64,000 nucleotides of DNA from Obrimoposthia wandeli. Taxonomy: Eukaryota. The stretch is taken from positions 1 through 64,000 of the forward strand of contig CDROCS010002070.1 in the NCBI GenBank assembly GCA_977020255.1, in the 5' to 3' direction. The position numbers and the translations under genes were made by a program. The notes beneath the pieces were generated by a model. It was not told the DNA's origin. It made no database searches and worked only from the letters and a program-made list of their open reading frames with translations. This document shows positions 40,614-56,250 of this stretch, piece by piece (the stretch's first letter is position 1; every line of letters starts with the position of its first letter).

Positions 40614-40633
40614 CTTTTAATGAAAGTACATGT

Positions 40634-40664: not shown

Positions 40665-40711
40665 GAAGGTAAGGCAAATTTTTGCGGCGCTGTTTATTTA
40701 TACACCGCATA

Positions 40712-40740: not shown

Positions 40741-40766
40741 TCGTCGTAATTAAGTAAGAAGAGTTT

Positions 40767-41777: not shown

Positions 41778-41783
41778 GATAAT

Positions 41784-41818
41784 AAGTCGATAGGGTAGAA
41801 GTGCTGGCCTATCGACTT
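41784..41818. terminator. Bidirectional terminator-like hairpin
   Basis: AAGTCGATAGG / CCTATCGACTT. Confidence 0.7.
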
Positions 41819-41860
41819 CAAGAAAAGTAAACCGCGTTTATCTAAGTAATAATGGCTTAT

Positions 41861-42769
41861 TTACTGTGCCACTTCTTGGTAAACTTTTAAGTCAGTGTGC
41901 AATTCATCTTTCAGCGCACTGAGTTTAAGTGTGCGTATTTTTTTGAATTGATAGACAAACACACCAATGTTAAAGAGAATGCTGATAATACTGATCGTCC
42001 ACATCGCCGCTGGATTATCTGATGATTTAACCGCAAACATCGTGGTATCAACAAATGCAGGAAACGTCATCACAAACATCATCCAGAAACCCAATGTGTG
42101 GGCTCGATGTTGTAACCAAGCGCCTTTTTTGATGAAGAAGGCTGGGATCGTACAAGACAGTAATAAGCATAAACCGGCGTAGAATGAATGGTCTGGTACA
42201 CAGTTATAAACGTAAGCGAAGTTCCAAAGATCATAAGCGATGATCCAGAACCAAAGCATATCTGGCCACACCATATCTTGGTATTTGTCTTTACTAATAT
42301 AAATGCCCACCCAACCACAAATTGTCACGATATTCAAAATACCGGCGATGGCATTCAGGTAATTCCATTGGCCACCAATGATCTCCATACCATCATGCAT
42401 ACCATTGAAACCAGCCGTTTGGAATTCACGCATAACCGCTTCAAAAATATTAAAACCTAAGATGAAGGCAGGGAAAAATAGCAGGTATTTATTCTTTGCA
42501 GCGCCTTTAATGTAACGTAACGCCATAAAGCCAAGGCAACCCGCTAATGCAGAATACGCTTTAACCCATGCAAACCAACTGCCTACCGTTGTGCCTTTAG
42601 CAGCTGTTGTTGGCCATACAAAGAGGGTTAACAGTATTGGTAACACTAAGAAACAAAATCCCGCCGCCCATTTACTACGTCTTGAAATTTCATTAAGCAG
42701 AATTAATGCCAGCGTTACCGTTATCCCAGCTACGACACTATACCAAGGGATTGATTCGAAAAAAAACAT
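41861..42769 (-). CDS. Polytopic membrane protein, DUF5692-like
   Basis: FESIPWYS, WFAWVKAYSALAGC, NIFEAV..EF, DMVWPDMLWFWIIAYDLWNFAYVYNC, WLQHRAHTL; family name from memory; AAGGA RBS. Confidence 0.65.
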   Translation of the reverse strand: MFFFESIPWYSVVAGITVTLALILLNEISRRSKWAAGFCFLVLPILLTLFVWPTTAAKGTTVGSWFAWVKAYSALAGCLGFMALRYIKGAAKNKYLLFFPAFILGFNIFEAVMREFQTAGFNGMHDGMEIIGGQWNYLNAIAGILNIVTICGWVGIYISKDKYQDMVWPDMLWFWIIAYDLWNFAYVYNCVPDHSFYAGLCLLLSCTIPAFFIKKGAWLQHRAHTLGFWMMFVMTFPAFVDTTMFAVKSSDNPAAMWTISIISILFNIGVFVYQFKKIRTLKLSALKDELHTDLKVYQEVAQ

Positions 42770-42866
42770 ACACATTTCCTTTGTTTACCTGAATATAAAA
42801 TGCATCAATTAATGCAAATGAGGGAGCCTACACTGCGGTATTTGTAATCAATTATTAACTTTTACA

Positions 42867-42939
42867 AAACGTGAGTTGGACTCATGTTTATACTACCCCT
42901 TTAGAGGTTGCTGTCAAAATGTAAGGTGGCCTCATGTTT
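42867..42939. promoter_or_regulatory. Two TetR-operator-like dyads 50 bp apart
   Basis: AAACGTGAG-N5-CTCATGTTT (42867) and AAATGTAAG-N5-CTCATGTTT (42917) between divergent DUF5692 and tetR. Confidence 0.55.
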
Positions 42940-43060
42940 TGATTTGTGGTTAATATCACGTAATTACTTGGATCCAGTAACAAGTTAAGCCCTTTAAAAT
43001 GCGGAGATGGATCTAAAGGATCGATGTGTTATTATTTCCCATTAATATATTTACAAGCAC

Positions 43061-43699
43061 ATGGGTTCAGCACTGATGGATTTAAAACAAGCAACAAATC
43101 GTCGAAAGCCAAGTCAGAATCGTAGTAAGGAACGTGTTGCGGTTATTTTAGAAGCTGTGAAGGCGTTGATCGAAGAAAAGGGGATTGCTAACCTAAAAAT
43201 TTCAGAAATCGCGAAACGGGCAAACAGCTCTGAAGGCTCTATTTATCAATATTTTTCAGATAAAGAAACAATCATCCTCTCTTTAGCTGAACACTTTATG
43301 AAAAAGATACATGTTATTGTTGATAAACATATTGATAAGTTAGATAGCTTAGATGACCTCGATATGGTCATGAGCTGTAATTTTGACGATATTTATGCAT
43401 TACATAAAAATGAGTCGGCACTGCGCCAGATTTGGTTTGAATCTGTCGATATCAAATTAATCCATCTGGCGACAGTCGATAGTGAGATGAAAGCCGATAG
43501 GATTTACCAAAGCGTACTTAAATTTGCCACGCCTAAAGATCCTGTACAATTGAAACAATTTATCCTGCTAATGAGTATTCAATTTAGCTCCGTGATCCGC
43601 TTATGTTTTTCCAGTAATGTCGGCACACCCGAACAGCTCAAAAAAATATATGTCGACACAGTGGTTGGCAGTATTACCAAGTACATTGATTTGAATTAA
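43061..43699 (+). CDS. TetR/AcrR-family regulator
   Basis: RRKPSQNRSKER..ILEA..LIEEKG..ISEIAKRA..GSIYQYF.DK; start may be 43076. Confidence 0.92.
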   Translation: MGSALMDLKQATNRRKPSQNRSKERVAVILEAVKALIEEKGIANLKISEIAKRANSSEGSIYQYFSDKETIILSLAEHFMKKIHVIVDKHIDKLDSLDDLDMVMSCNFDDIYALHKNESALRQIWFESVDIKLIHLATVDSEMKADRIYQSVLKFATPKDPVQLKQFILLMSIQFSSVIRLCFSSNVGTPEQLKKIYVDTVVGSITKYIDLN

Positions 43700-43744
43700 C
43701 GATTGGTTGACCTGAATTAACGCTAGATAGCGCACGGTTCGATA

Positions 43745-44374
43745 CTACTCATTAAAACAGATCACTCTATCGCAAACGGCATTGAGCAGATCATCATCAT
43801 GAGAAATGACCAGTAGACCGAGTTGCCGTTGGCCAACTTCCTCGCACAATGCCAGCCAAATATCTCGCTGGGTTAATGGATCTAGCTGCGCAGTGATCTC
43901 ATCACACAGTAAATACTTAGTGGTAGGAGCTAAAGCTCTGACCAAATTGAGTCTTTGTAATTCGCCTCCAGAAAGTTCGCTCGGAAAGCGCTTTAGCCAA
44001 CTGGGATCAATTTTATAGCGTGCTAATTGTTTAGTATCAATAGGATGGCTTTCAGTTAATGATCGCTCTAATGACCAGCGGGGATTAAAGGCAAATTCAG
44101 GCTGTTGGCAGATCCACTGCACACTGTTTGGGCTATGTTTCGTTATTATAGGTTCTATTGCAGGTTCTATCGTTGCTAATTTTAGCTTACATTGTGACTG
44201 TGTCAGCGAGCCTGAATGCAAAGGGTGCATACCCGCAAGTACCATTGCTAGCGTTGATTTTCCACAACCGCTAGGGCCTGTTAGACCGAGTATTTCACCA
44301 CTATGTAATATTAATTTAGGTAACGTAATTAATTGCTTGTCTCTTTTGGCTGTGCCATTAACTAGCTTTAGCAT
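43745..44374 (-). CDS. ABC ATPase (NikE/YntE/DppF-like)
   Basis: GPSGCGKST, LSGGELQR, LLCDE, ISHD; AAGGAG RBS before ATG 44374. Confidence 0.92.
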   Translation of the reverse strand: MLKLVNGTAKRDKQLITLPKLILHSGEILGLTGPSGCGKSTLAMVLAGMHPLHSGSLTQSQCKLKLATIEPAIEPIITKHSPNSVQWICQQPEFAFNPRWSLERSLTESHPIDTKQLARYKIDPSWLKRFPSELSGGELQRLNLVRALAPTTKYLLCDEITAQLDPLTQRDIWLALCEEVGQRQLGLLVISHDDDLLNAVCDRVICFNE

Positions 44375-45098
44375 TACAGCTCCTTGTCCAGTTCGCAGGA
44401 CTCGCATCCCAGAGTGCTTGAGTATAGGCATTGGCGATACCCAGTCTAATCGCTGTGGGGGTGGTATTGTCGACGATATGACCATCCTTTAGCACCAGTA
44501 TTCGATGTGCGACTTGGGTAATGCCTGGCAAATCATGGCTGATGATCATGACGCCTTTTGCTGGATGTATTTTGTCTGGCTGACATAACGCGGCCAGTTC
44601 ACTAAAAACTTTGTTGGAACGGCTTAATTCAAGTCCACAAGTCGGCTCGTCGGCAATGATAAAATCGGTATTTTGTATTAACGCCATTGCCGTGAGCACG
44701 CGTTTAGCCATACCTCCTGAGAGTTGGCTAGGGTAAAGGGTTAATATACTGTCATCTAAACCGACCTTTTGTAACGTAGCGGTTAGCTCTGCTGGTGTAT
44801 TCTGAGATGCATTTGCTTGCTGGATTAATTGTGCACCGACACGTGTACTTGGGTTTAGCGCAGTTGCCGCTTGCGCAACAATGGCAATACTGTTTTTGTT
44901 AGCTGATTTAAATTTAACCGTGCCCTGTAGGTTAAATCCCTGAGGACATGCTCCCAGCAATGCATTTGCAAGAATACTTTTACCACTGCCACTGGCGCCT
45001 ATTATCGCCAAGCATTCACCGCGTTTAACAGTGAAACTGGCATTTTTTAGCAGCTTGTGATGATTATTTTCAATGGTGAGTTGCTCAACGATTAACAT
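44358..45098 (-). CDS. ABC ATPase (NikD/YntD/DppD-like)
   Basis: GASGSGKS, LSGGMAKR, IIADEPT, ISHD. Confidence 0.92.
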   Translation of the reverse strand: MLIVEQLTIENNHHKLLKNASFTVKRGECLAIIGASGSGKSILANALLGACPQGFNLQGTVKFKSANKNSIAIVAQAATALNPSTRVGAQLIQQANASQNTPAELTATLQKVGLDDSILTLYPSQLSGGMAKRVLTAMALIQNTDFIIADEPTCGLELSRSNKVFSELAALCQPDKIHPAKGVMIISHDLPGITQVAHRILVLKDGHIVDNTTPTAIRLGIANAYTQALWDASPANWTRSCNAKAS

Positions 45099-45886
45099 GA
45101 TGATTGGCCCTTTCTAAGTGAGCGAGTGAAGCAAGTTGCATTTTCTGCCAGTAATAATAAGGCCGTGATCAATACCAATCCTGGGAAGAGCGCTAACCAC
45201 CAATTACCGATAATCAAATAGCGACTTGCTTCGGATAATAATATACCCATTGAAGGTTCGTTTGGGTTTAAGCCAAAGCCAAGGAATGTTAATGCCGCTG
45301 CGTGCAGGATCGCGTGAGGTATCAGTAATAACAGACCTGTTAACCATTGTGGTAATAGGTGTGGCACCATGTGCTGTACTAAAACTTGCCAGTAGGGCTT
45401 ACCAAAATTTCTAGCCAATAAGACATAAGGTCGGCGTGTTAGCTGGATCACTTCGGCACGCAATAACCGGGTCAATCGAGGCCAGTGGCTTAACGTAATC
45501 GCAAAAATGACGCCCTGTGAGCTACCTTCTAATGCCAAGGTCAACAAAATCAGTAACAATAAATGTGGTAATGACATCATGGTATCAACCAATAAGTCGA
45601 CAAACCAAGCCAATCGTTGATGCGTACTGGCGATGATTGCGAGGCTAAATGCAATCATCGAACTCATTAATGCGGCAATGCCGCCAACTTGAAGGCTACT
45701 GATAAGTGCTTTCATAGTACGTGAAAATTGGTCTCGTCCAAGCCAGTCAGTACCGAACCAATAAGTGATTGAAGGGGGTTGTAACTTGGCCATTAAATCA
45801 ATATCACTCCCTTGGCTAGGCCAAAAATAAGCGCCAGCAACCAGCAGCAGGAAGCAAATTAAACTTGGGTAGGAGAGATGTTTCAT
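45092..45886 (-). CDS. ABC permease (NikC/YntC/DppC-like)
   Basis: FGTDWLGRD, HWPRLTRLLRAEV, LTFLGFG..PS.G..L. Confidence 0.92.
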   Translation of the reverse strand: MKHLSYPSLICFLLLVAGAYFWPSQGSDIDLMAKLQPPSITYWFGTDWLGRDQFSRTMKALISSLQVGGIAALMSSMIAFSLAIIASTHQRLAWFVDLLVDTMMSLPHLLLLILLTLALEGSSQGVIFAITLSHWPRLTRLLRAEVIQLTRRPYVLLARNFGKPYWQVLVQHMVPHLLPQWLTGLLLLIPHAILHAAALTFLGFGLNPNEPSMGILLSEASRYLIIGNWWLALFPGLVLITALLLLAENATCFTRSLRKGQSSC

Positions 45887-46869
45887 TGCGTTATATCCTG
45901 ACCAGGCAAAAGGGAGTAATGCAGTAAATTAGCGATGCTATTACCCGTAAAAATGAATACCGATGAGATTAAGGTGATGCCCATTAATAAGGCGGTGTCG
46001 CCACTGAGTCCTGCAATCACTAGGGTATTTCCAAGTCCGGGGTAATTAAATACCGTTTCAGCTAATATTGAACCGCCAAATAATTCCGCAAAACTGGCAA
46101 ATTGCAGTACTAAAGCAGGTGTGAGGCTGTTTCTCAATATGTGGTGACGAATAATACCGCAAGTAGATTTACCATGTATGCGGGCATAATTGACATGTTC
46201 ACTGGCTAATACATCCAGTACTTTTTCTTTGGTGTGCAGCACGATGGGCGCTAAACTCGTCGCCGCGAGCGCAATACATGGCAATATCAAGTGCTCTAAA
46301 CGGGTTAACCAAGGTACATTACTTGGATCCATGCCTAATGGAGCAGAACAACAAACAGGTAATACACTCAGCTTGACTGCAAATACATAGATAAGGATTA
46401 AGCCAAGCCAAAAAGAGGGCGTGCTGGCTAATACCCAGGCAAAACGAGTGATCAGCCGATCCCAAATACTGTTTTCTGTTAAGGCTGCAATAAGCCCTAA
46501 AACGTAACCAAAAAACAATGATAATGTCCAACTTGCTGCCATCAATAATAACGATGACGGAAAGCGTTCGATAATAATATTGCTAACGGGTTGTTGAAAT
46601 TTAATCGAAAATCCGAGATCGCCCTGCAGTAAATGTTGACCCCAGATGATGAAGCGTTCAGAAATACTCTGGTCTAAACCTAAATTCTGAGCGAGTAAGA
46701 GCCGTTGTTCATTAGATATTGACATCATTTGATCGCCAATATAATAATTGAGCGGCTCGATAGGTGAAACCGCCAGCAACATGAAGGCGAACAGTGTAAC
46801 CAGTATTAACTGAAGCATCAGTCTCGCTGTCGAGCTGGCAATAATGGTTATTGGCATGTCCATGACCAT
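45883..46869 (-). CDS. ABC permease (NikB/YntB/DppB-like)
   Basis: LGLDQ..QGDLG.S, PSFWLG, HLILP, YARIHG, GSILAETVFNYPGLG. Confidence 0.92.
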   Translation of the reverse strand: MVMDMPITIIASSTARLMLQLILVTLFAFMLLAVSPIEPLNYYIGDQMMSISNEQRLLLAQNLGLDQSISERFIIWGQHLLQGDLGFSIKFQQPVSNIIIERFPSSLLLMAASWTLSLFFGYVLGLIAALTENSIWDRLITRFAWVLASTPSFWLGLILIYVFAVKLSVLPVCCSAPLGMDPSNVPWLTRLEHLILPCIALAATSLAPIVLHTKEKVLDVLASEHVNYARIHGKSTCGIIRHHILRNSLTPALVLQFASFAELFGGSILAETVFNYPGLGNTLVIAGLSGDTALLMGITLISSVFIFTGNSIANLLHYSLLPGQDITQ

Positions 46870-48413
46870 TCAGTAATATTTGCAGTGAGTGGCCAACCAT
46901 GTCCATGAGGTTCTGGTATTGGATCACCAAGATCTAAGCATGAAGACGTAGCGTATAAATGGTCTAAATTGACTAACCAAGTCCAGGGTTGATCTGCCAA
47001 TATTTGCTGTTGAGCCTGTTGCCAAAATGGCAAAGATGCTTCCCAAGACGGGGCATTACTTGCTTGTTCAAGCGCGCGATCAACGAGCTTACTTTTATAG
47101 AAGCCAGTGTTAAAGAAATCGACACCAGCAAAGTCACTGTGATAGACAAAGCGAACTTCTTTTGCTGAGTGGCTACCAAAGCCCATTAATACTGGATTCT
47201 CATGCATTTTTGTCGCAATGAAATCCCAGCTACCAGCAAGTAATTCAATATTAATACCTAAGGGTTTAACCATATCAGCGGCGACAATTGATAATTGTTC
47301 ACGGACGCTATCGCCAGATTTGTATAATAGGGTCATGTTGGCTTCATGGCCATTTTTGTCGATAATGCCATTACCATTGGTATCTGCCCAGCCAGCATCA
47401 CTGAGTATTTTCCGCGCGGCATGAAGGTCTGCACCATTTAGTAAGTTTTGCTCTGCTGGACCCCAAGGCATACCATCAGCAATGGAGTGGGCTGGGCGGC
47501 CATAACCGTTTAATACGCCATTGACCAACAGATCACGATCCATTGCTAGGTTGATTGCTTGTCTAATCGCAAGATCTTGGCTGACGTTGTTGCCATTTAT
47601 TTGTTGATTATCTGTTTTGTTTGGTTTGTTTACTGGCCAAGAAATGCCTCGATTATCAACACTGTCAATTTTCCATAACGCGAGAGGTGGGGTGATCACC
47701 GCTGAAAATCGCTGAGGAATAGCGGCAAGTTGTAATTGACCGGACTTGAGTAAGGCTAACTTGCTGTCTTCATCGGTGAACACAATTAAGATATCTTTAA
47801 ATTGTGGTTTTTGTGCGTAATAGAACGGATTTGCGGTCACGAGTAGTTGCTGACCCTTGTCCCAACGTTTGAAAATATACGGACCAGAACCGATTGGATG
47901 CTGACCATAATTTTCGTCATAACCGTCTTTTGGTACGATACCAAGTGACGTTAGCTCATCGATGAAAGTGATGTCAGGTTGCTTTAGCACAAATTGGATC
48001 TTGCTTGAATCTAGTACTTTAATGTTAACTAGGTTATTTAAATCATGAGTCGTGGCCGCATTCTTTGCGGTCAGATAGGTAAAAGCGATATCTGATGTGG
48101 TGAGATCGACGCCATTACTAAATTTTATATTCGGTTTTAATTCAATGGTCCAGGTTAAGCGGTCGCTTGAAAGTGTCCAGTTTGCAGCAAGGTCTCCACT
48201 GAGTGCTAATTCTTTATTTCGGCGGATCAATGTCGATTGAAATAAAGGATCACCATAACGCCCCCAGCCATAAATAGGATTAAACCCAGCATCCGGCTCA
48301 TTGCCTAAAGATATAATCAACTGTTTCGGTGTGGCCGCGTAAGACTCTGAAACTAAGATTGTCAATGGTGCTGTAATGGCAACCGTTGCTAATAATAAAG
48401 ATGATAATTTCAT
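46848..48413 (-). CDS. Family-5 solute-binding protein, YntA/NikZ-like (probable nickel binding)
   Basis: EPDAGFNP..GW, IGSGPY, R.AIN.A.DR, C-terminal EPHGHGW His motif; divergent from hypB. Confidence 0.8.
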   Translation of the reverse strand: MKLSSLLLATVAITAPLTILVSESYAATPKQLIISLGNEPDAGFNPIYGWGRYGDPLFQSTLIRRNKELALSGDLAANWTLSSDRLTWTIELKPNIKFSNGVDLTTSDIAFTYLTAKNAATTHDLNNLVNIKVLDSSKIQFVLKQPDITFIDELTSLGIVPKDGYDENYGQHPIGSGPYIFKRWDKGQQLLVTANPFYYAQKPQFKDILIVFTDEDSKLALLKSGQLQLAAIPQRFSAVITPPLALWKIDSVDNRGISWPVNKPNKTDNQQINGNNVSQDLAIRQAINLAMDRDLLVNGVLNGYGRPAHSIADGMPWGPAEQNLLNGADLHAARKILSDAGWADTNGNGIIDKNGHEANMTLLYKSGDSVREQLSIVAADMVKPLGINIELLAGSWDFIATKMHENPVLMGFGSHSAKEVRFVYHSDFAGVDFFNTGFYKSKLVDRALEQASNAPSWEASLPFWQQAQQQILADQPWTWLVNLDHLYATSSCLDLGDPIPEPHGHGWPLTANITEWSWTCQ

Positions 48414-48667
48414 TTTTATGATCCTTTATACATTTAGAGTAATCATACTAATATTAAATTCGTGGCCTTCAAAGATAAAAAAGTGTTAAACATCACAGTT
48501 TTATAAAACAGTATTTAAAGGTTAATTTTCATGATCGATGAAACAGCATATTTCACATTTTCCTTACCAAATAAACGTTTTGGTAACATGGGATAGCGTA
48601 TTTGTGACAAGTCGTATCATCCCATGTCTCTGTCATTATCTCCGTTCTTTCTCCTCGTTTAGGTTTC

Positions 48668-48696
48668 ATACATAACAATATTTTAATGTTATGTAT
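48668..48696. promoter_or_regulatory. Perfect 10-bp inverted repeat (operator candidate) between ABC importer and hypB operon
   Basis: ATACATAACA-N9-TGTTATGTAT. Confidence 0.6.
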
Positions 48697-48874
48697 TGAT
48701 TTAAAAATTAAAAAATACGATCAACTTCAAATTAATAGAGTAATTACTCCAAAGTATGACCTACGTCTTAGTAGGTAGTTTGAAGTAAGGGTAATATGGC
48801 CGCATAAAATTTTTAATTATTGATAGGGCAAGAGGAAAAACCTCCCCCGAATTTCATAACAGAGGTGAAAAATC

Positions 48875-49546
48875 ATGAAAAACTTTAAAATTCTTGAGAT
48901 TAAAGAAGGTATATTCGACAACAATAACAAGGAAGCAGACTTGTTAAGAGCTGAATTAAAACAGCAAAATAATTTGTTAATAAATCTGATGTCTTCTCCG
49001 GGTTCAGGTAAGACGACGACGCTGGTAAGCACAATTAATGCGTTAAAAGACGAAATGAAAATCGGTGTTATGGAAGCGGATATCGACTCTGATGTTGATG
49101 CTCACACTATCGCCAATACTGGCACAAAAGTAATCCAACTACATACTGGTGGCATGTGTCATCTTGATGCTGAGATGACGAAACAAGGTCTAGAGGGGTT
49201 AGGTTCAGAAGGTCTTGATTTAACCATTCTTGAAAATGTAGGTAATTTAGTGTGTCCAGCTGAGTTTGATACCGGTGCAGCAAAAAATGTCATGATTTTA
49301 AGTGTGCCAGAAGGTGATGACAAGCCACTTAAATACCCTCTAATGTTCTCTATTTGTGATGTATTACTGATTAATAAAATTGATGCCATGGGGTTCTTTG
49401 ATTTTGATTTAGAAGCCGCGACAACGCGTGTAAAAAAATTAAATCCAAATATTAAAGTTTTTCCTATCTCTGCTAAAACTGGCGAAGGCGTTGAAGCTTG
49501 GACTAACTGGCTTCGTGGTGCAGTGAAAGATTGGCAAGAATCATAA
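48875..49546 (+). CDS. hypB: Nickel-insertion GTPase HypB (short form, no N-terminal His-rich region)
   Basis: SSPGSGKTT, TGGMCHL, ENVGNLVCPAEFDTG, SVPEGDDKPLKYP, NKID. Confidence 0.95.
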   Translation: MKNFKILEIKEGIFDNNNKEADLLRAELKQQNNLLINLMSSPGSGKTTTLVSTINALKDEMKIGVMEADIDSDVDAHTIANTGTKVIQLHTGGMCHLDAEMTKQGLEGLGSEGLDLTILENVGNLVCPAEFDTGAAKNVMILSVPEGDDKPLKYPLMFSICDVLLINKIDAMGFFDFDLEAATTRVKKLNPNIKVFPISAKTGEGVEAWTNWLRGAVKDWQES

Positions 49547-49582
49547 AAATTATAAAAATAGAGTTTTAGCTTTGGAGGCAAT

Positions 49583-52273
49583 GTGGAAAATAAAGATAAG
49601 GTCTTAGATCTTGCGAACAAGATCAGTCGGGTGAAGCGAGGATCAAAAGCAGGCATTACGTTTGATGATCCTGAGTATAAAATTTATAGCCCTTGGATGT
49701 CGGAAGATGTAGCAGAGGTTACCCTTTGCTTGAAACTGCGTGAAAAAATGAGTGCTGCAGAAGTTGCTGCTGTTTGCGGCAGACCTGAAAAAGAAGTTGC
49801 TGAACTGCTATGGGAATCTGCAGTAGGCGGCGCAGCCTTTATCAATAATGTTGACGGTGTGGACCAATACTGGATCGATATCTGGGTGCCAGGCCACATG
49901 GAAATGGTTGTTAACAATAAAGAACTTATTCAAAAGTATCCTGAACTAGGCGCTGCGTTTGATGCATTCGGTAAGAAAAAAGGCCCACTATGCGCAGGTA
50001 ACATCCCTGTTGGTAAAGGCCCTATGCGTGTGATCCCAATCCAAACTGCGATTGATGGTGATACGAGAACGGCTTCTTATGAAGAAGTGTCTAAATACCT
50101 TGATGATAATGAAGTGTTCTCTCTTTCTGATTGTGCTTGCCGTACATCTCGCGAAGCGATGGATGAAGGTTGCGGCCATTTGAAAGAAGATATCTGTATT
50201 CAGATGGGACATGCTGCGGAATACTATATCCGTACCGGTCGTGGTCGCGCTATCAGCCGTGATGAAGCGATGGTCGTGATCCAAAAAGCCGAAGATAACG
50301 GCTTGATGCACAGCATTCCCAACTTAGATGGTTCAGGTAAAACCCATGCGATCTGTAACTGTTGTGGTTGTGGTTGTTTTGCGATGAGACTTGCAGAGCA
50401 GTGGCAAAACCCGGATATGGTTCGTTCGAACTATACGGTTAAAATTGACTTAGATAAATGTGTTGCTTGTGGCGAATGTGTTGAAACATGTCCGACGAAT
50501 GCATTGAAGTTGGGTCAGAAATTATGCAGCAAAGTACCTGAACCAGTAATAGAGCGTGAACTTCCGCATAATACCGAATGGGGCGAAGATAAGTACAACC
50601 CGGATTACCGTGAAAATAAACAAGTTGTTATGGAAGGCGGTACAGCACCTTGTAAAGCGGGCTGTCCGGCACATATCGGTGTTCAAGGTTATATCAAACT
50701 TGCGTCGCAAGGCAATTACGAAGAAGCACTAAAACTGATTAAAATGGAAAATCCATTCCCAGCCGTGTGCGGCCGTATCTGTCCAAAATTCTGTGAAGAT
50801 GACTGTACCCGTTGTGATCTTGATGGTGCGGTTGCTGTCGATGATATTAAAAAATTCATTGCACAAAAAGAAATGGACGCGGATACACGTTTTATCCCGA
50901 CAATTAAATATGATTACGACCAGAAAATTGCGGTTATCGGTGGTGGTCCAGCCGGTCTTTCTTGTGCTTACTATTTGGCTGTTGAAGGCTACAAAGTAAC
51001 GGTATTTGAAAAGCAAACAGCACTGGGTGGTATGTTAACACTCGGTATCCCATCTTATCGACTAGAAAAAGATGTGATTAACGCAGAAATCGATGTGCTA
51101 AGAGAATTGGGCGTTGAGTTTAAAACCGGCATTGAAATCGGTAAAGACATCACACTTGCTGAGCTGAGAAAACAAGATTTCCAAGCTTTCTACATGGCAA
51201 TTGGTGCGCAAGCTGGTCGTCCGTTAGGACTTGAAGGTGAAGATGCGCAAGGTGTTGTGACTGGCGTTGAGTTCTTACGTCAAGTTAACCTGGGTGAAAA
51301 CAGTGAACTTGAAGGCAAAGTAATTGTTATCGGTGGTGGTAATGTTGCCATTGACGTAGCAAGAACGGCAACTCGAGTTGGTGCTGCACAAGTGGACATG
51401 TTCTGTCTTGAAAGCCGCGAAAAAATGCCTGCACACGCAGAGGAAGTTCAAGAAGCGTTAGATGAAGATATCAACGTTAACAATTCTTGGGGTCCAAAAC
51501 GTATCGTGACTGAAGACGGCAAAGTCGTTGGTGTTGAATTCAGAAAATGTCTTTCTGTCATCGATGCAAATGGCAGATTTAACCCGAGCTATGACGAAAA
51601 TAATACTAAGATCGTTGATGCTGACCATGTATTGCTTTCAGTTGGCCAAGCAATTGCTTGGGGCAACATTCTTGAAAACAGTAACATCGAGTTGAATCCT
51701 AACCAAACAATCCCAGCAGACGCAGCAACTTATCAAACTGATGAGCCAGATGTATTTGCCGGCGGTGACGTGGTAACTGGCCCTCGGTTTGCCATTGATG
51801 CGATTGCAGCAGGTAAAGAAGGTGCTATTTCTATTCACCGTTATGTTCAAAATGGTCAAAGTTTGGTACTTGGTCGTATTAAACGCGATTACCGTGCGTT
51901 TGATAAAACCAACATTAATCTTGATGGATATGATAGCGCGCCTAGACAGCAAATTGCCCATGTTGACGGTAAAGCGTCGAAACAAACATTCCGCGATCTA
52001 CGTGAGACATTCACAGAAGAGCAAGTTCGGATAGAAACTCAGCGTTGCCTCGGTTGCGGTGTGGCTGTTGCCGACGAATTTATGTGTATCGGCTGTGGTT
52101 CTTGTACAACGAAATGTAGATTCGATGCTATCTCTCTTGTTAAAACACACAACGCTGAGGGTTCCGACCTGAAAGAAGTGAAGAAGATCATTATCAAGCA
52201 TGCGTTAAAACGTAAATTAAGAATTGCGGTAAACAAACCGATCAAAAAAATTAAATCGTTAATAAAAATATAA
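49583..52273 (+). CDS. Multi-domain Fe-S flavoprotein, paralog 1 (Cys/His-rich N-domain, ferredoxin, GltD-like module, C-terminal ferredoxin)
   Basis: CACR..GCGH..C, HAICNCCGCGC, CVACGECVETCP, APCKAGCP..CGRICPKFCEDDC, GGGPAG, GGGNVA, RCLGCG..CIGCGSCTTKC; GTG start after GGAGG. Confidence 0.85.
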   Translation: MENKDKVLDLANKISRVKRGSKAGITFDDPEYKIYSPWMSEDVAEVTLCLKLREKMSAAEVAAVCGRPEKEVAELLWESAVGGAAFINNVDGVDQYWIDIWVPGHMEMVVNNKELIQKYPELGAAFDAFGKKKGPLCAGNIPVGKGPMRVIPIQTAIDGDTRTASYEEVSKYLDDNEVFSLSDCACRTSREAMDEGCGHLKEDICIQMGHAAEYYIRTGRGRAISRDEAMVVIQKAEDNGLMHSIPNLDGSGKTHAICNCCGCGCFAMRLAEQWQNPDMVRSNYTVKIDLDKCVACGECVETCPTNALKLGQKLCSKVPEPVIERELPHNTEWGEDKYNPDYRENKQVVMEGGTAPCKAGCPAHIGVQGYIKLASQGNYEEALKLIKMENPFPAVCGRICPKFCEDDCTRCDLDGAVAVDDIKKFIAQKEMDADTRFIPTIKYDYDQKIAVIGGGPAGLSCAYYLAVEGYKVTVFEKQTALGGMLTLGIPSYRLEKDVINAEIDVLRELGVEFKTGIEIGKDITLAELRKQDFQAFYMAIGAQAGRPLGLEGEDAQGVVTGVEFLRQVNLGENSELEGKVIVIGGGNVAIDVARTATRVGAAQVDMFCLESREKMPAHAEEVQEALDEDINVNNSWGPKRIVTEDGKVVGVEFRKCLSVIDANGRFNPSYDENNTKIVDADHVLLSVGQAIAWGNILENSNIELNPNQTIPADAATYQTDEPDVFAGGDVVTGPRFAIDAIAAGKEGAISIHRYVQNGQSLVLGRIKRDYRAFDKTNINLDGYDSAPRQQIAHVDGKASKQTFRDLRETFTEEQVRIETQRCLGCGVAVADEFMCIGCGSCTTKCRFDAISLVKTHNAEGSDLKEVKKIIIKHALKRKLRIAVNKPIKKIKSLIKI

Positions 52274-52341
52274 GACATGAAGTGATAATAATATTATAAA
52301 ACAGTTATTTAAATATTTTTTGATTGATTTATAAGTACATC

Positions 52342-52373
52342 AAAAGGCGGGGGATATCAGTTCTTCGCCTTTT
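52342..52373 (+). terminator. Terminator-like hairpin between paralog 1 and hypA
   Basis: AAAAGGCG..CGCCTTTT. Confidence 0.5.
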
Positions 52374-52398
52374 CAATTAAATTAATAAGGAGGTTGTT

Positions 52399-52740
52399 AT
52401 GCATGAATTAGGTGTTGTCTTTGAAGTTATCAAAACCGTTAAAAACTTTGTCGATAAAAATGACTTAACAAAAGTTGATACAATCGTACTACAAATAGGT
52501 GAACTATCATCCATGATCCCGAAATACATTCACGAGTGTTTCCCTGCCGCTATTGATGGTACAGAGTTTGAAGAGACAAAATTGGTGATTGAAATTATAC
52601 CCGCTGCCGCTATCTGTAAAGGGTGTAAGCATGTTTTTAATATCATTAAGCATAAATCTCAATGTCCAGAATGTGAAAGCCTGGAGTGGGGAATGTTAAC
52701 CGGTAAAGAGTTCTCGATAAAAGAAGTTATTGCTTGTTAA
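52399..52740 (+). CDS. hypA: Nickel metallochaperone HypA
   Basis: MHE N-terminus, IGELS, CKGC and CPEC zinc finger, GKEFSIKEV. Confidence 0.95.
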   Translation: MHELGVVFEVIKTVKNFVDKNDLTKVDTIVLQIGELSSMIPKYIHECFPAAIDGTEFEETKLVIEIIPAAAICKGCKHVFNIIKHKSQCPECESLEWGMLTGKEFSIKEVIAC

Positions 52741-53058
52741 TGCGTAACGGCAGTTGATTTATGACTGCCTTGCCTAAAAGTGAATGAATCCTCGCTACAT
52801 TAATGCTGACACTGCATATTACACTGCCAGTATGAAGAGATAATCATCTGTTTCTTTATGCCAAAATCGATCAAATTAACCACGTTTAACCATAAATTCC
52901 GTCCATCTAAACATTCAGAAATTAGCATGTTGGCGCTAACTATTAATACGTAACACATTGTTTTTTTTAGCTTAGCGTGATTCAGATCTGATCATTAATA
53001 CCAAAGATAAGTATAATAACCCTTCATTTTGTAAGTGAATTTTATTTAAAAGAAAAGC

Positions 53059-53156
53059 CTTATTCCTATTGATACCCATGGTCATTTAGCTGAGCTCTTG
53101 ATTAGCACTCTTAATTAGCAGTCTGAATCGCTATGGGTATGAATAGGTGAAATAAG
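53059..53156. ncRNA. Candidate structured RNA (long imperfect hairpin) upstream of paralog 2
   Basis: CTTATT/AATAAG, CCTATT/AATAGG, ATACCCAT/ATGGGTAT nested arms; loop holds tandem CTCTT[G/A]ATTAGCA. Confidence 0.4.
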
Positions 53157-53256
53157 CGCCTCCTTAACTGTGTCTGATGGTTATGCATTGAAAATGCTGT
53201 TAAGTAACTAATTTAAAAAGAATAATAATTAGTATTTAAACTTTGGAGTTAATGTC

Positions 53257-55944
53257 ATGGTAAAACAGAAAGTATTAGATTTGGCCAATTTGATCAGTAA
53301 GACGAAACGTGGTGCTAAAGATGAAATCAGGCCAGAGCATCCGGAATATAAAGTGTTAGAGCCCGTCGTCACCGATGAAATGGCAGAAGTGGCGTTGTGC
53401 CTCAAATTCCGTGAGGGGATGACGGTAGAAGAGGTTGTTCCTCTGTGTGGTAAATCGCCAGAAAGAACCAAAGAACTATTGTGGGAACTGGCTATGGTCG
53501 GAGCCACTGTGATGGGTGAACAAGAGGGTGTCGACAAATTTTGGTACGAGATCTGGGTTCCCGGCCACATGGAGTTACTGGTCAATCATAAAGAGAATGC
53601 GCTTAAATATCCGCAACTGGGTAAAGCATTTGATGATTATGGCAGAAAAAAAGGTCCGCTTGCGGTGGGTAACTTCCCGATAGGCACAGGTCCTATGCGA
53701 GTAATACCAATCGAATCTGCAATTTCGGGTGAATCTAGACGTGTATCGAATGATGAAATTTCTAAATACTTAAATGATAACGATCGATTCTCGGTATCTG
53801 ATTGCTCTTGCCGTGCAGCCCGAGAAGCGCTAAATGAAGGTTGTGGTCACCTTAAAGAAGATATGTGTATTCAATTAGGCCATGCTGCGGAATATTATAT
53901 TCGTACTGGTCGTGGTCGAGAAATCAACCGTGAAGAAGCATTTGAAATTATTCAAAAAGCCGAAGACAACGGTTTAATGCATAACATGCCGAATGTTGAC
54001 GGACCTGGACACACTCACGCGATCTGCAATTGTTGCGGTTGTGGCTGCCTGGCTTTAAGAAACGCCAATATGTTAACCAACCACGATTTTGTGCGTTCTA
54101 ACTATACTGTGAAAATCGATGAAGATAAGTGTGTTGCTTGTGGTGAATGTGTTGAAGTGTGTCCAACTAACGCATTGAAACTAGGGCAAAAGCTGTGTAA
54201 AAATACACCTATCCCTAAGGTTAATCGTGATCTTCCTTTTAATACCGAATGGACGCCAGATCGATGGAATGAAGATTACCGTATCAACAGAGAAGTTGTT
54301 ATGAAAGAGGGGACTGCACCTTGTAAAGCGGGCTGCCCAGCGCATATCGGTGTGCAAGGTTATATCAAGTTGGCGTCGCAAGGTAAGTATGCTGAAGCAC
54401 TAAAACTGATTAAGTTAGAGAATCCATTCCCTGCAGTATGCGGACGTATTTGTCCAAAATTCTGTGAAGATGATTGTACCCGTTGTGATATAGATGGTGC
54501 GGTTGCTGTTGATGATATCAAGAAATTCATTGCACAGCAGGATATGAATGCAGAAACGCGCTATGTGCCAACGATTAAAAATGATTACGATAAAAAAATT
54601 GCCGTTATCGGTGCAGGTCCTGCTGGTTTATCTTGTGCTTATTACTTGGCTGTACAAGGTTACAAAGTCACTGTGTTTGAAAAACAAAAAGTATTGGGCG
54701 GTATGTTAACACTGGGTATTCCTTCTTACCGCCTTGAAAAAGATGTTATCAACGCCGAAATCGATGTATTGAAAGACATGGGTGTTGAATTTAAAACGGG
54801 CGTTGAAATTGGTAAAGATGTCAGCCTTAGTGATCTTAGAACACAGGATTACAAAGCATTCTATATGGCTATCGGTGCTCAGGCTGGTCGTTCGCTTGGA
54901 CTTGAAGGTGAAGATGCTAAAGGTGTTATCACCGGTGTTGAATTTTTACGTCATGTTAATTTAGGCGAACACTCGGAATTTGCAGGTAACGTGATTGTCA
55001 TCGGTGGTGGTAATGTTGCTATTGATGTAGCAAGAACCGCAACCCGAGTTGGCGCTGCACAAGTGGATATGTATTGCCTTGAAAGTCGTAAAAAAATGCC
55101 TGCACACGCAGAGGAAGTTGAAGAAGCGTTAGATGAAGATATAAACATTAATAATTCTTGGGGGCCAAAACGCATCGTCGCTGAAAATGGTAAAGTCGTG
55201 GGTGTAGAATTCAGGAAATGTATTGCTGTATTTGACGCAGATGGCAAATTTAACCCGAGCTATGACGAGAACGATACTAAGATTGTTCTTGCTGACCATG
55301 TATTACTTTCAGTGGGCCAAGCGATGGATTGGGGTAGTATTCTTGCAGACAGCAACGTTGTATTGAATCCTAACCAGACTATTCAAGCTGATGCTGATAC
55401 TTTCCAGACGGGTGAACCGGATATTTTCGCTGGCGGTGACGCATTAACAGGTCCTCGTTTTGCCATTGACGCGATTGCGCACGGTAAAGAAGGGTCTATT
55501 TCTATTCATCGTTTTGTTCAGCGTGGTCAAAGTTTGGTGTTAGGTCGCCTAAAACGTGATTACCGTGCATTTGATAAAGCCAATGTTAATCTTGCTGGTT
55601 ATGATACTGCACCAAGACAACAAACGGAGCATGTCGATGGTAAAAAATCAAAACAAACCTTTAAGGATCTTCGTGAAACATTTACCGAAGAACAAGTTAA
55701 GAAAGAGTCGGAACGTTGCCTAGGTTGTGGTGTAGTCATTGCCGATGAATACACGTGTATTGGTTGTGGTGCCTGTACTACCAAGTGTAAATTTGATGCA
55801 ATAACCCTAATCAGAACCTACGATGCTGATGCGGTAGAGTTTAAAGATCTGAGATCTACGGTCATTAAACACGCGCTAAAACGTAAGGTGCGAGTTGCGG
55901 TCAATAAACCAATTAAAAAGATTAAAGCAATTTTTTCCAACTAA
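53257..55944 (+). CDS. Multi-domain Fe-S flavoprotein, paralog 2
   Basis: Colinear with 49583..52273 and shares all Cys motifs; GAGPAG, GGGNVA. Confidence 0.87.
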   Translation: MVKQKVLDLANLISKTKRGAKDEIRPEHPEYKVLEPVVTDEMAEVALCLKFREGMTVEEVVPLCGKSPERTKELLWELAMVGATVMGEQEGVDKFWYEIWVPGHMELLVNHKENALKYPQLGKAFDDYGRKKGPLAVGNFPIGTGPMRVIPIESAISGESRRVSNDEISKYLNDNDRFSVSDCSCRAAREALNEGCGHLKEDMCIQLGHAAEYYIRTGRGREINREEAFEIIQKAEDNGLMHNMPNVDGPGHTHAICNCCGCGCLALRNANMLTNHDFVRSNYTVKIDEDKCVACGECVEVCPTNALKLGQKLCKNTPIPKVNRDLPFNTEWTPDRWNEDYRINREVVMKEGTAPCKAGCPAHIGVQGYIKLASQGKYAEALKLIKLENPFPAVCGRICPKFCEDDCTRCDIDGAVAVDDIKKFIAQQDMNAETRYVPTIKNDYDKKIAVIGAGPAGLSCAYYLAVQGYKVTVFEKQKVLGGMLTLGIPSYRLEKDVINAEIDVLKDMGVEFKTGVEIGKDVSLSDLRTQDYKAFYMAIGAQAGRSLGLEGEDAKGVITGVEFLRHVNLGEHSEFAGNVIVIGGGNVAIDVARTATRVGAAQVDMYCLESRKKMPAHAEEVEEALDEDININNSWGPKRIVAENGKVVGVEFRKCIAVFDADGKFNPSYDENDTKIVLADHVLLSVGQAMDWGSILADSNVVLNPNQTIQADADTFQTGEPDIFAGGDALTGPRFAIDAIAHGKEGSISIHRFVQRGQSLVLGRLKRDYRAFDKANVNLAGYDTAPRQQTEHVDGKKSKQTFKDLRETFTEEQVKKESERCLGCGVVIADEYTCIGCGACTTKCKFDAITLIRTYDADAVEFKDLRSTVIKHALKRKVRVAVNKPIKKIKAIFSN

Positions 55945-55980
55945 GCCGTAAAGTCGATACTATAAAAAAACTATGATATG

Positions 55981-56017
55981 AAAAGGGCTGGGAATATAAA
56001 TTCTCAGCCTCTTTTTT
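55981..56017 (+). terminator. Intrinsic terminator
   Basis: AAAAGGGCTGGGAA..TTCTCAGCCTCTTTTTT. Confidence 0.75.
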
Positions 56018-56250
56018 ACCATTATCACTTATACCTATAAAGAGGTGATTGAAAGAGGTTGTGGACAGACTCTTTACAGAGCGGTATCTTATCTAATACA
56101 AAGAAATCACAAAATAAGTGATAAAAGGATGAAGCCAAGGTTTTTAACCACAGGCTTTACAAGAATGACAGACGACTTAATAACCGGGTGATTGTTCGAA
56201 AAAATACCCTGCTTATAATTTTGGGTAAGAATTTAAAGGGAAGTTTATAT

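What the first reader, a model, noticed from the sequence alone, without database searches (positions are those of the whole stretch)
45883..55944. Orphan nickel-maturation system: HypB/HypA and a Ni-type ABC importer serving two large Fe-S flavoproteins, no hydrogenase
Seen: the order is hypB - flavoprotein 1 - hypA - flavoprotein 2 on one strand, divergent from a five-gene family-5 ABC importer whose binding protein ends in EPHGHGW. No [NiFe]-hydrogenase subunit, hypCDEF, urease or CODH gene occurs in the 64 kb. Known: HypA/HypB insert Ni into client enzymes and usually sit next to them, and Ynt/NikZ-type binding proteins import Ni. Inference: the interleaved ~895-aa flavoproteins are the clients, a class of Ni-dependent (or Ni-Fe-S) NAD(P)H-linked oxidoreductase that I do not recognise as characterised.
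Basis: partly seen in the sequence, partly recalled or inferred. Interest (0 to 1): 0.88.

Follow-up and report, generated by a model that had tools for sequence, protein, structure and literature searches.

The report
HypAB nickel cassette around IsrA-like flavoproteins
A Moritella contig carries nickel-chaperone genes (hypB, hypA) and a nickel importer wrapped around two large iron-sulfur flavoproteins of the putative isoprene-reductase (IsrA) family, a suspected but still unproven new class of nickel enzyme proposed in 2023.

Summary
On the + strand lie hypB, flavoprotein 1, hypA and flavoprotein 2, divergent from a five-gene YntABCDE-type nickel ABC importer. A DUF5692 membrane protein and a TetR regulator belong to the same neighbourhood.

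- Of 80 homologous loci from six phyla, 71 keep both hypB and hypA beside the flavoprotein gene.
- Of 39 genomes carrying the cassette, 18 have neither a [NiFe]-hydrogenase large subunit nor HypD. Seventeen of those 18 have the cassette HypA as their only HypA.
- Ten to twelve of the 39 also lack urease and CODH.
- The window's organism is about 99% identical to Moritella dasanensis ArB 0140. It has no hydrogenase. It does have a urease, with its own ureJ and ureDEFG.

The idea is not new. Kronen et al. 2023 (PMC10134865) described this family as "clade 9" homologues of the putative isoprene reductase IsrA. They reported the HypA, HypB, TetR and DUF5692 neighbourhood and proposed nickel at an N-terminal Cys6 site. 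No biochemistry exists yet.

New here are a gammaproteobacterial member with tandem paralogues, a physically linked Ynt nickel importer, and a Cys-rich domain without any solved structural relative. The scan had not reported this before on other DNA.

The parts
41861..42775 (-). DUF5692 polytopic membrane protein (304 aa, at least 6 hydrophobic segments). Role unknown; candidate substrate or metal permease.
   Evidence: PF18948, E 2e-133. Hydropathy. The same family lies beside or inside the cassette in 31 of 80 loci. Kronen 2023 gives a co-occurrence of 0.4.
43061..43699 (+). TetR-family regulator (212 aa), the likely ligand-responsive repressor of the cluster.
   Evidence: PF00440 TetR_N, E 1.6e-12. 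TetR is a recurrent neighbour of the family (Kronen 2023 co-occurrence 0.21).
43745..44485 (-). yntE/nikE-like ABC ATPase. The ORF start is probably downstream of the listed one, because it overlaps the previous gene by 128 nt.
   Evidence: PF00005; best NCBIfam match is NikE, below cut-off.
44358..45098 (-). yntD/nikD-like ABC ATPase.
   Evidence: PF00005; best NCBIfam match is NikD, below cut-off.
45092..45886 (-). yntC/nikC-like permease.
   Evidence: PF00528; best NCBIfam matches are Opp2C and NikC nickel permeases, below cut-off.
45883..46869 (-). yntB/nikB-like permease.
   Evidence: PF00528 and PF19300; best NCBIfam match is the Opp2B nickel permease, below cut-off.
46848..48413 (-). 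YntA-type periplasmic nickel-binding protein (521 aa, signal peptide-like N-terminus).
   Evidence: Full-length alignment to the Y. pestis extracytoplasmic nickel-binding protein YntA, PDB 4OFL/3RY3, E 1.5e-119 to 3e-121. PF00496.
48414..48874 (.). Divergent 461-bp control region between yntA and hypB. It holds a 13-nt-arm palindrome (48668-48696) and one copy of the motif TATAAAACAGTATTTAAA (48502-48520). The second copy of that motif is at 52295-52313, upstream of hypA.
   Evidence: No Rfam family matched. Function not tested.
48875..49546 (+). HypB nickel GTPase (223 aa). It is the short type, without an N-terminal CxxCGC or His-rich site.
   Evidence: TIGR00073, 246 bits against a cut-off of 121. 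P-loop GSGKT, GMCHLD and NVGNLVCP motifs are present and conserved in 62-66 of 66 cassette HypBs.
49583..52273 (+). Flavoprotein 1 (896 aa), IsrA-family Fe-S flavoprotein. Domains: winged-helix-like 5-132, Cys-rich 165-285, Fer4 286-309, Fer4_20 353-432, FAD/NAD(P) 448-744, C-terminal Fer4 around 822-850.
   Evidence: 99% identical to M. dasanensis L013. It falls in a gammaproteobacterial clade with the Vibrio, Shewanella, Ferrimonas and Hahella copies.
52399..52740 (+). HypA nickel metallochaperone (113 aa).
   Evidence: PF01155, 101 bits. N-terminal M-H-E nickel motif and two CxxC zinc motifs are present and conserved in 65 of 65 cassette HypAs. It is the only HypA in G001.
53257..55944 (+). 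Flavoprotein 2 (895 aa), paralogue of flavoprotein 1 (73% identity) with the same domains and all nine N-domain cysteines.
   Evidence: It forms a separate Moritella-only clade, shared by two other Moritella genomes.
55985..56010 (+). Terminator-like hairpin (11-bp stem followed by a T-run) that closes the cluster before gltB.

Best explanation
This is a member of the IsrA ('clade 9') family of about 900-residue Fe-S flavoproteins, together with its dedicated maturation and supply genes.

Proposed mechanism:
1. The YntABCDE-type ABC importer brings Ni(II) into the cell.
2. HypB, a GTPase with a Cys-His...Cys metal site, passes the nickel to HypA, which binds it at its N-terminal Met-His-Glu motif.
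3. HypA loads it into the Cys-rich part of the flavoprotein's N-terminal domain. The six invariant cysteines are C184, C186, C205, C258, C260 and C265. C197, C261 and C263 are additional in this subfamily.
4. That site is probably a nickel-containing iron-sulfur centre.
5. In catalysis, NAD(P)H reduces the FAD of the GltD/NfnB-like core. Electrons then pass along four [4Fe-4S] clusters to the N-terminal centre.
6. There a small, probably hydrophobic unsaturated substrate is reduced, by analogy with isoprene to methylbutene in Acetobacterium wieringae.
7. The TetR regulator and the DUF5692 membrane protein would sense and handle that compound.

Shown: gene content, motifs, and the conserved, hydrogenase-independent linkage. 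Inferred: nickel as the metal, the site of insertion, the direction of electron flow and the substrate.
For: Linkage:
- hypB lies immediately upstream and hypA immediately downstream of the flavoprotein gene in most of 80 loci. These come from Bacillota, Pseudomonadota, Spirochaetota, Thermodesulfobacteriota, Bdellovibrionota and Bacteroidota. HypB is present in 73, HypA in 73 and both in 71.

Independence from known clients:
- 18 of 39 cassette genomes lack both the [NiFe] large subunit and HypD. The same 21 genomes are positive for both.
- 17 of those 18 have a single HypA above cut-off, which is the cassette copy.
- 17 of the 21 hydrogenase-positive genomes carry a second HypA, next to their hydrogenase or HypD where checked. 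An example is G002: C4:47111 beside HypD, and C4:81168 in the cassette.
- Only 2 of the 18 have a full urease and 4 have a CODH.
- M. dasanensis urease has its own ureJ and ureDEFG.

Chaperone competence:
- Nickel and zinc ligand motifs are conserved in all cassette HypAs and nearly all cassette HypBs.

Nickel supply:
- The adjacent importer's binding protein is a full-length YntA homologue.

The candidate site:
- Six cysteines are invariant in 46 N-domains down to about 25% identity.

Literature:
- IsrA, HypA and HypB are co-induced by isoprene. A. wieringae has no hydrogenase or hypCDEF. A neighbourhood network of 988 homologues gives HypA 0.73, HypB 0.56, DUF5692 0.4 and TetR 0.21 (PMC10134865).
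- hypA and hypB are induced roughly 370- to 585-fold by isoprene in Pelotomaculum (bioRxiv 10.64898/2026.02.25.708027).
Against: - No member of the family has been purified or had its metals measured, so nickel is inferred only from the chaperones.
- The HypB G-domain sites can also bind zinc.
- The Ynt importer is linked to the cassette only in M. dasanensis among the 80 loci, and it could equally feed the urease.
- Four loci with full flanks have the flavoprotein without hypAB (L030, L040, L070, L081).
- Four hydrogenase-positive genomes have only the cassette HypA, so there it may serve both clients.
- The three extra cysteines of this subfamily do not track the HypA linkage. P0155 and P0216 lack them but have HypA adjacent.
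- This subfamily is only about 33-43% identical in the N-domain to the more distant full-length relatives. Its identity to IsrA itself could not be measured, so the substrate analogy is weak.
- The complex prediction for HypA with the N-domain was not run by the tool.
Confidence: 0.65

Rival explanations
1. HypA, HypB and the Ynt importer serve a conventional nickel enzyme elsewhere in the genome (here the urease, as in Helicobacter). The flavoproteins would then be unrelated neighbours.
For: M. dasanensis (G001) has a complete urease. Ynt importers supply urease in Yersinia (established knowledge). Four hydrogenase-positive genomes have only the cassette HypA.
Against: The urease locus has its own nickel permease UreJ and UreD, UreE, UreF and UreG. 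The hypB-flavoprotein-hypA order is kept in 71 of 80 loci across six phyla. It also occurs in 10-12 genomes with no hydrogenase, urease or CODH at all. Genomes with hydrogenases mostly keep a separate HypA.
Confidence: 0.08
2. The cassette HypA and HypB mature the flavoprotein but deliver a metal other than nickel, such as zinc or iron. Alternatively they act as assembly or scaffold factors for an unusual all-iron cluster at the Cys6 site, for example a double-cubane or non-cubane cluster.
For: The HypB G-domain site binds zinc as well as nickel (established knowledge). The cassette HypB lacks the high-affinity N-terminal nickel site and His stretch. Six cysteines would suit an Fe-S cluster alone; Kronen 2023 notes a resemblance to P-type or double-cubane sites. 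The nickel importer linkage is seen in one species only.
Against: The HypA Met-His-Glu nickel motif is conserved in 65 of 65 copies. HypB scores well above the HypB equivalog cut-off. A YntA-type nickel importer sits divergently next to hypB here. No non-nickel role of HypA/HypB is established.
Confidence: 0.17
3. The enzyme works in the opposite direction. The N-terminal metal centre would oxidise a small molecule (H2, CO, formate or similar) and the GltD-like core would reduce NAD(P)+. That would make it a new kind of nickel-dependent dehydrogenase or hydrogenase-like enzyme rather than an ene-reductase.
For: The NfnB/GltD-like modules are reversible electron wires (established knowledge). 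The subfamily is 65-75% identical across phyla, which suggests a universal small substrate rather than a niche hydrocarbon. No substrate is known for any member except the inferred isoprene.
Against: IsrA is induced by the electron acceptor isoprene. TetR, MerR and ABC-2 exporter neighbours fit a response to a hydrophobic or toxic compound. There is no sequence or fold similarity to hydrogenase, CODH or ACS.
Confidence: 0.1

Closest known systems
IsrA, putative isoprene reductase of Acetobacterium wieringae ISORED-2, and its 'clade 9' homologues (Kronen et al. 2023, mSystems, PMC10134865)
   Same: - Length of about 900 aa.
- An unassigned N-terminal domain of about 270 residues with two CxC motifs 74 residues apart and a six-cysteine site.
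- Then Fer4, Fer4_20, the FAD/NAD(P) domain and a C-terminal Fer4.
- hypA and hypB adjacent, with TetR and DUF5692 as recurrent neighbours.
- Occurrence in genomes without [NiFe]-hydrogenase or hypCDEF.

   Different: - The host is a facultative, psychrophilic marine gammaproteobacterium rather than a strict anaerobe.
- The gene order is hypB-flavoprotein-hypA-flavoprotein, with two paralogues, one HypA and no 350-aa ferredoxin gene.
- A Ynt nickel importer is physically linked.
- The protein belongs to a very tight subfamily, 65-75% identical across six phyla.
- It carries three extra conserved cysteines (CNCCGCGC).
- Identity to IsrA itself was not measured, and the substrate is unknown.
HypA/HypB nickel delivery to [NiFe]-hydrogenase (and to urease in Helicobacter)
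   Same: Bona fide HypB (TIGR00073 above cut-off) and HypA (PF01155), with the nickel, zinc and GTP motifs intact.
   Different: No hydrogenase large subunit or HypD in the organism. The urease has its own accessory set. The adjacent conserved gene is a flavoprotein.
NfnB / GltD / DsrL-type Fe-S flavoproteins (glutamate synthase small-subunit family)
   Same: The core at residues about 345-760 (Fer4_20 plus Pyr_redox_2) matches these families at E 1e-65 to 1e-139.
   Different: All equivalog scores are below cut-off (for example TIGR01317: 228 against 447). About 345 extra N-terminal and 130 extra C-terminal residues are present. The window's true gltD lies at 60879-62369, next to gltB.
YntABCDE nickel ABC importer of Yersinia
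   Same: The binding protein aligns over its full length with YpYntA (4OFL, E 1.5e-119). The five-gene layout is the same.
   Different: In Yersinia it lies beside the urease genes. Here it lies beside hypB and the flavoprotein, and the urease locus is elsewhere with UreJ.

Membership tests
IsrA 'clade 9' FAD-dependent oxidoreductases (Kronen 2023) | About 900-aa architecture: unassigned N-terminal domain of about 270 aa, Fer4, Fer4_20, FAD/NAD(P)-binding domain and C-terminal Fer4. | tested here: met
   Pfam on both paralogues. Nothing is assigned to residues 1-285.
IsrA 'clade 9' FAD-dependent oxidoreductases (Kronen 2023) | Two CxC motifs and a six-cysteine environment in the N-terminal domain. 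| tested here: met
   C184/C186 and C258/C260 have the same 74-residue spacing as IsrA C180/C182 and C254/C256. C205 and C265 complete the six. All six are invariant in 46 sequences.
IsrA 'clade 9' FAD-dependent oxidoreductases (Kronen 2023) | Gene neighbourhood of HypA, HypB, TetR and DUF5692. | tested here: met
   All four are present in the window and recur in the 80 loci.
IsrA 'clade 9' FAD-dependent oxidoreductases (Kronen 2023) | Full-length alignment and placement with IsrA (VUZ27132.1) in a tree. | not tested
   The IsrA sequence could not be retrieved. The cluster look-up returned no names.
IsrA 'clade 9' FAD-dependent oxidoreductases (Kronen 2023) | Isoprene (or other alkene) reduction, and nickel content. 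| not testable with these tools
   No biochemistry exists for any member in the searched literature.
HypB (TIGR00073) | Equivalog score above cut-off; P-loop and Cys-His...Cys metal site. | tested here: met
   246 bits against 121. GSGKT, GMCHLD and NVGNLVCP motifs are present.
HypA (PF01155 / TIGR00100) | Family score; N-terminal Met-His-Glu nickel site; two CxxC zinc motifs. | tested here: met
   PF01155: 101 bits against 28.9. TIGR00100: 75.2 bits, below its 88.1 cut-off. Motifs are present.
[NiFe]-hydrogenase maturation system | Hydrogenase large subunit and HypC/D/E/F in the same genome. | tested here: not met
   No PF00374 and no PF01924 match in G001, and none on contig C2070. HypC, HypE and HypF were not searched separately.
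E. coli-type NikABCDE | NikA equivalog score; NikR regulator. | tested here: not met
   TIGR02294: 117 bits against a cut-off of 393. No NikR_C in G001.
YntABCDE nickel importer | Binding protein homologous over its full length to YpYntA; two permeases and two ATPases. | tested here: met
   4OFL, E 1.5e-119, residues 31-520 against 5-499. Gene content. Nickel binding itself was not tested.
Glutamate synthase small subunit (GltD) | Equivalog score; pairing with GltB. | tested here: not met
   TIGR01317: 228 and 222 bits against a cut-off of 447.7. The real gltB-gltD pair is at 56188-62369, behind a terminator.

The most novel reading that the evidence does not exclude
The very tightly conserved subfamily represented here is 65-75% identical from Clostridia to Moritella. 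On this reading it is a distinct nickel-iron-sulfur enzyme whose catalytic centre sits on a Cys-rich fold with no solved relative. Its substrate would be a common small molecule other than isoprene. HypA/HypB would then have a third natural client class besides hydrogenase and urease. Moritella, Shewanella and Vibrio would offer cultivable hosts in which to prove it.
Probability: 0.5. Interest if true: 0.8.

Novelty: new member of a known kind. Interest (0 to 1): 0.5.

Why it matters
Only a handful of nickel enzyme classes are known, and HypA/HypB are textbook hydrogenase (and Helicobacter urease) factors. A widespread flavoprotein family that keeps its own HypAB in genomes without any hydrogenase would add a new nickel-dependent redox enzyme, and probably a new type of metal cluster.

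The hypothesis was published in 2023 for strictly anaerobic acetogens, but it is still untested biochemically. This window adds independent support through a nickel importer placed divergently beside hypB.

It also shows that the cassette occurs in cultivable marine Gammaproteobacteria (Moritella, Shewanella, Vibrio, Ferrimonas). Knock-outs, nickel-limitation experiments and protein purification should be more feasible there than in the original enrichment cultures. That feasibility is my expectation and was not tested here.

Tried and rejected
1. Whole-'genome' search of the window's own assembly. G000 is a 1.35 Gb, 6912-contig mixture. Its hydrogenase, CODH and urease hits lie on other contigs and cannot be assigned to this organism. 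I used the near-identical isolate genome G001 instead.

2. [quoted passage not shown] This is not supported. P0155 and P0216 lack them yet have HypA immediately downstream. A third contig, L094, was too short to judge.

3. Fold assignment of the N-terminal domain.
- Residues 5-132 give only generic winged-helix matches (best Z 8.0).
- The Cys-rich part modelled alone (mean pLDDT 69) has no PDB match: VIA best Z 3.4 and Foldseek nothing at E <= 0.001.
- A profile against PDB hits only the ferredoxin segment.
- AlphaFold DB and the ESM Atlas return only uncharacterised homologues.

4. Complex prediction for HypA with the N-domain.

5. Riboswitch or RNA search of 41000-56500: no Rfam match.

6. 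NikR: absent from G001.

7. Linkage of nickel importers to the cassette in other lineages. None was found. The other neighbours are ABC-2 exporters, FecCD/Peripla_BP_2 importers, and TetR, MerR and GntR regulators.

8. Retrieval of the IsrA sequence through cluster names: no names were returned.

9. Literature search for biochemical characterisation of the family: none beyond Kronen 2023 and two 2026 Pelotomaculum preprints.

Full report
**What is there**

On the + strand lie:
- hypB (48875-49546; TIGR00073, 246 bits against a cut-off of 121);
- an 896-aa flavoprotein (49583-52273);
- hypA (52399-52740; PF01155, 101 bits);
- an 895-aa paralogue (53257-55944; 73% identical).

Divergently on the - strand lies a five-gene family-5 ABC importer (43745-48413). 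Its binding protein aligns over its whole length with the Yersinia pestis nickel-binding protein YntA (PDB 4OFL, E 1.5e-119). It does not reach the E. coli NikA equivalog cut-off. The motif PEPHGHGW is near, not at, the C-terminus.

Two further genes belong to the unit. These are a DUF5692 polytopic membrane protein (41861-42775, -) and a TetR regulator (43061-43699, +). A strong terminator-like hairpin (55985-56010) separates flavoprotein 2 from the ordinary gltB-gltD pair.

**Whose DNA it is**

The window is the first 64 kb of a 97.9-kb contig inside a 1.35 Gb, 6912-contig assembly. That assembly is clearly a mixture. Its hydrogenase, CODH and urease hits are on other contigs and cannot be attributed to this organism.

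The proteins are 99-100% identical to those of Moritella dasanensis ArB 0140 (L013). I used that draft genome (G001) as the organism's proxy.

**The flavoproteins**

Each has a GltD/NfnB-like core (Fer4_20 plus Pyr_redox_2), which scores below every equivalog cut-off. A ferredoxin motif flanks the core on each side. Residues 1-285 form an N-terminal domain that no Pfam or NCBIfam model covers.

The family is very large: 7898 hits among 8000 scored candidates. This subfamily is strikingly conserved, at 65-75% identity between Moritella and Clostridia, Spirochaetes, Bacteroidales and Desulfobacterota.

An exhaustive search with the N-domain alone found 1633 cluster representatives. They include about 900-aa flavoproteins and about 350-aa ferredoxin-type proteins.

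Across 46 diverse N-domains, six cysteines are invariant: C184, C186, C205, C258, C260 and C265. C197, C261, C263 and H243 are present in 63-85%.

AlphaFold models gave the following.
- Residues 5-132 are a winged-helix-like module (best Z 8.0, generic).
- The Cys-rich alpha/beta part has no match among solved structures. VIA gave a best Z of 3.4 and Foldseek found nothing at E <= 0.001.
- A sequence profile against PDB hits only the ferredoxin segment.
- AlphaFold DB and ESM Atlas matches are all uncharacterised homologues.

**Is HypAB tied to the flavoprotein?**

A scan of one genome per species returned at least 592 relatives, and I kept the best 80 loci with 10-kb flanks. By tblastn with the window's proteins, 73 loci have hypB, 73 have hypA and 71 have both. 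Nearly always hypB ends within about 100 bp upstream and hypA starts within about 130 bp downstream. Where DUF5692 is inserted between them, hypA starts about 1 kb downstream.

Of the nine exceptions, two are contigs cut off where the gene would lie (L015, L075). In L061 the roughly 2 kb of upstream flank holds another gene and no hypB.

The loci come from Bacillota (56 rows in the tree), Pseudomonadota (12), Spirochaetota (7), Thermodesulfobacteriota (5), Bdellovibrionota (2) and Bacteroidota (1).

Other recurrent neighbours are:
- DUF5692 in 31 loci;
- a 420-aa amine-oxidase/phytoene-desaturase-like flavoprotein in 19 loci;
- a 355-aa HTH protein in 18 loci;
- TetR, GntR and MerR regulators, a small methyltransferase, an ECF S-component and ABC-2 exporters.

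**Are there conventional clients?**

I searched 39 cassette-bearing genomes.
- The [NiFe]-hydrogenase large subunit is present in 21, and HypD in exactly the same 21.
- All 39 have HypA. Seventeen of the 18 hydrogenase-less genomes have one HypA above cut-off, the cassette copy. G013 has two, together with extra flavoprotein copies.
- Seventeen of the 21 hydrogenase-positive genomes have an additional HypA. In Shewanella atlantica one HypA sits beside HypD and the hydrogenase and another sits in the cassette, 34 kb away on the same contig.
- Among the 18 hydrogenase-less genomes, only G001 and G011 have a full urease. Weak partial hits in G013, G016 and G028 cover 35-51 residues.
- Only four of the 18 have a CODH above cut-off.

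So 10 to 12 of the 39 genomes have no classical nickel-chaperone client at all. CODH in any case uses CooC-type factors (established knowledge).

In M. dasanensis the urease locus carries its own nickel permease UreJ and UreD, UreE, UreF and UreG.

The cassette chaperones look fully competent.
- All 65 HypAs have start-His-Glu and two CxxC motifs.
- In the 66 HypBs, the P-loop is present in all 66, GMCHLD in 65 and N[VI]GNLVCP in 63.
- None of the HypBs has an N-terminal CxxCGC or His stretch.

**Literature**

The association is published. Kronen et al. 2023 (mSystems, PMC10134865) identified a 901-aa FAD-dependent oxidoreductase, IsrA, in isoprene-reducing Acetobacterium wieringae. It is co-induced with HypB and one of the two HypA copies (the second hypA lies in the same RT-PCR-confirmed operon), in a genome without [NiFe]-hydrogenase or hypCDEF.

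[quoted passage not shown] Among 988 homologues they found HypA (0.73), HypB (0.56), DUF5692 (0.4) and TetR (0.21) as neighbours.

They also modelled four [4Fe-4S] clusters plus a fifth site in a Cys6 environment with two CxC motifs, and proposed that site as the nickel site.

The window's proteins match every stated feature, including the 74-residue spacing of the CxC motifs. I could not retrieve the IsrA sequence to measure identity.

Two 2026 preprints on Pelotomaculum report hypA and hypB induced roughly 370- to 585-fold by isoprene, and still treat the IsrA-like enzyme as uncharacterised. DUF5692 appears in no other paper. I found no purification or metal analysis of any member.

**What this window adds**

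1. A YntA-type nickel importer lies divergently adjacent to hypB. This is independent circumstantial support for nickel. It is seen only in M. dasanensis among the 80 loci and could also feed the urease.
2. There are tandem paralogues. Flavoprotein 1 groups with the single copies of Vibrio, Shewanella, Ferrimonas and Hahella. Flavoprotein 2 forms a separate Moritella-only clade, shared by two other Moritella genomes. The whole proteobacterial set is nested among Bacillota sequences, which suggests acquisition by transfer. This rests on a FastTree topology with a weak backbone.
3. A quantitative test against hydrogenase, HypD, urease and CODH content.
4. The Cys-rich domain has no solved structural relative.

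**Mechanism, with status of each step**

Shown: gene content, motifs and the conserved hydrogenase-independent linkage.

Inferred: Ynt imports Ni(II). HypB passes it to HypA with GTP hydrolysis. HypA loads the N-terminal Cys-rich site. NAD(P)H reduces FAD, electrons pass through the four cubanes to the nickel-containing centre, and an unsaturated, probably hydrophobic small molecule is reduced there. TetR and DUF5692 would sense and handle that compound.

I put 0.65 on the client relationship with nickel. Much less rests on any particular substrate.

**Rivals**

- Service to the urease or another distant enzyme (0.08).
- Maturation with a metal other than nickel, or of an all-iron cluster (0.17).
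- Reverse operation as an oxidising enzyme (0.10).

**Things that led nowhere**

- The extra cysteines do not track the HypA linkage.
- There is no Rfam element and no NikR.

**Verdict**

This is a new, well-equipped gammaproteobacterial member of a known but biochemically untested kind.

Noticed in passing
whole assembly G000 (window = C2070:1-64000): The window's 'genome' is a 1.35 Gb assembly of 6912 contigs. It carries several different [NiFe]-hydrogenases, HCP/CODH-like genes and a urease on other contigs. It is therefore a mixed or host-plus-microbe assembly, and this contig is a Moritella dasanensis-like bacterium (99-100% protein identity to NZ_AKXQ01000014).
   Followed up: partly
window 48502-48520 and 52295-52313: A near-identical 19-nt AT-rich motif (TATAAAACAGT[T]ATTTAAA) occurs upstream of yntA/hypB and again between flavoprotein 1 and hypA. 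There are 2 matches against 0.19 expected, and 4 of 100 shuffles reach 2. It could be a shared operator or chance in AT-rich spacers.
   Followed up: partly
window 48668-48696 and 42914-42942: Two different 13-nt-arm palindromes with 3-nt spacers lie in the yntA-hypB and DUF5692-TetR intergenic regions. They are candidate regulator sites and were not tested.
   Followed up: no
loci L029, L032, L034, L036, L044, L045, L050, L059, L060, L063, L064, L072, L074, L080, L086, L088, L091 (upstream of hypB); L087 (downstream of hypA): In many Clostridia the cassette is preceded by a conserved pair. One is a 355-aa HTH protein with weak IS481-transposase likeness. The other is a 420-aa amine-oxidase/phytoene-desaturase-like flavoprotein. 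An ECF S-component and a small SAM methyltransferase often follow hypA. These may hint at the pathway or substrate of the subfamily.
   Followed up: partly
G002 (Shewanella atlantica) contig C4: 47111-57854 and 81168-81497: A conventional hydrogenase/hypD/hypA cluster and the hypB-flavoprotein-hypA cassette lie about 25-34 kb apart on one contig, each with its own hypA. This is a natural case for testing chaperone specificity.
   Followed up: no
L097 (G001:C21:72000-85619): The Moritella dasanensis urease locus comprises a urea ABC transporter, ureABC, ureJ (HupE/UreJ nickel permease), ureD, ureE, ureF and ureG. It is a second, self-contained nickel system in the same organism.
   Followed up: yes
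window 33503-41777: A Cus-type copper/silver efflux cluster (the outer-membrane factor and CusB-like fusion protein were scanned; the 1055-aa pump-sized ORF at 34221-37388 was not) and a DUF411 protein lie just upstream of the nickel cluster. This part of the contig is a metal-handling neighbourhood. Other first-stage notes cover it.
   Followed up: no
L055 3759-7204 and L092 13354-16294: In Caloramator and Clostridium cavendishii a FecCD/Peripla_BP_2-type ABC importer sits beside the cassette. In Caloramator it comes with an FmdE-like zinc-finger protein. It may be a metal-chelate uptake system, but its specificity is unknown.
   Followed up: no
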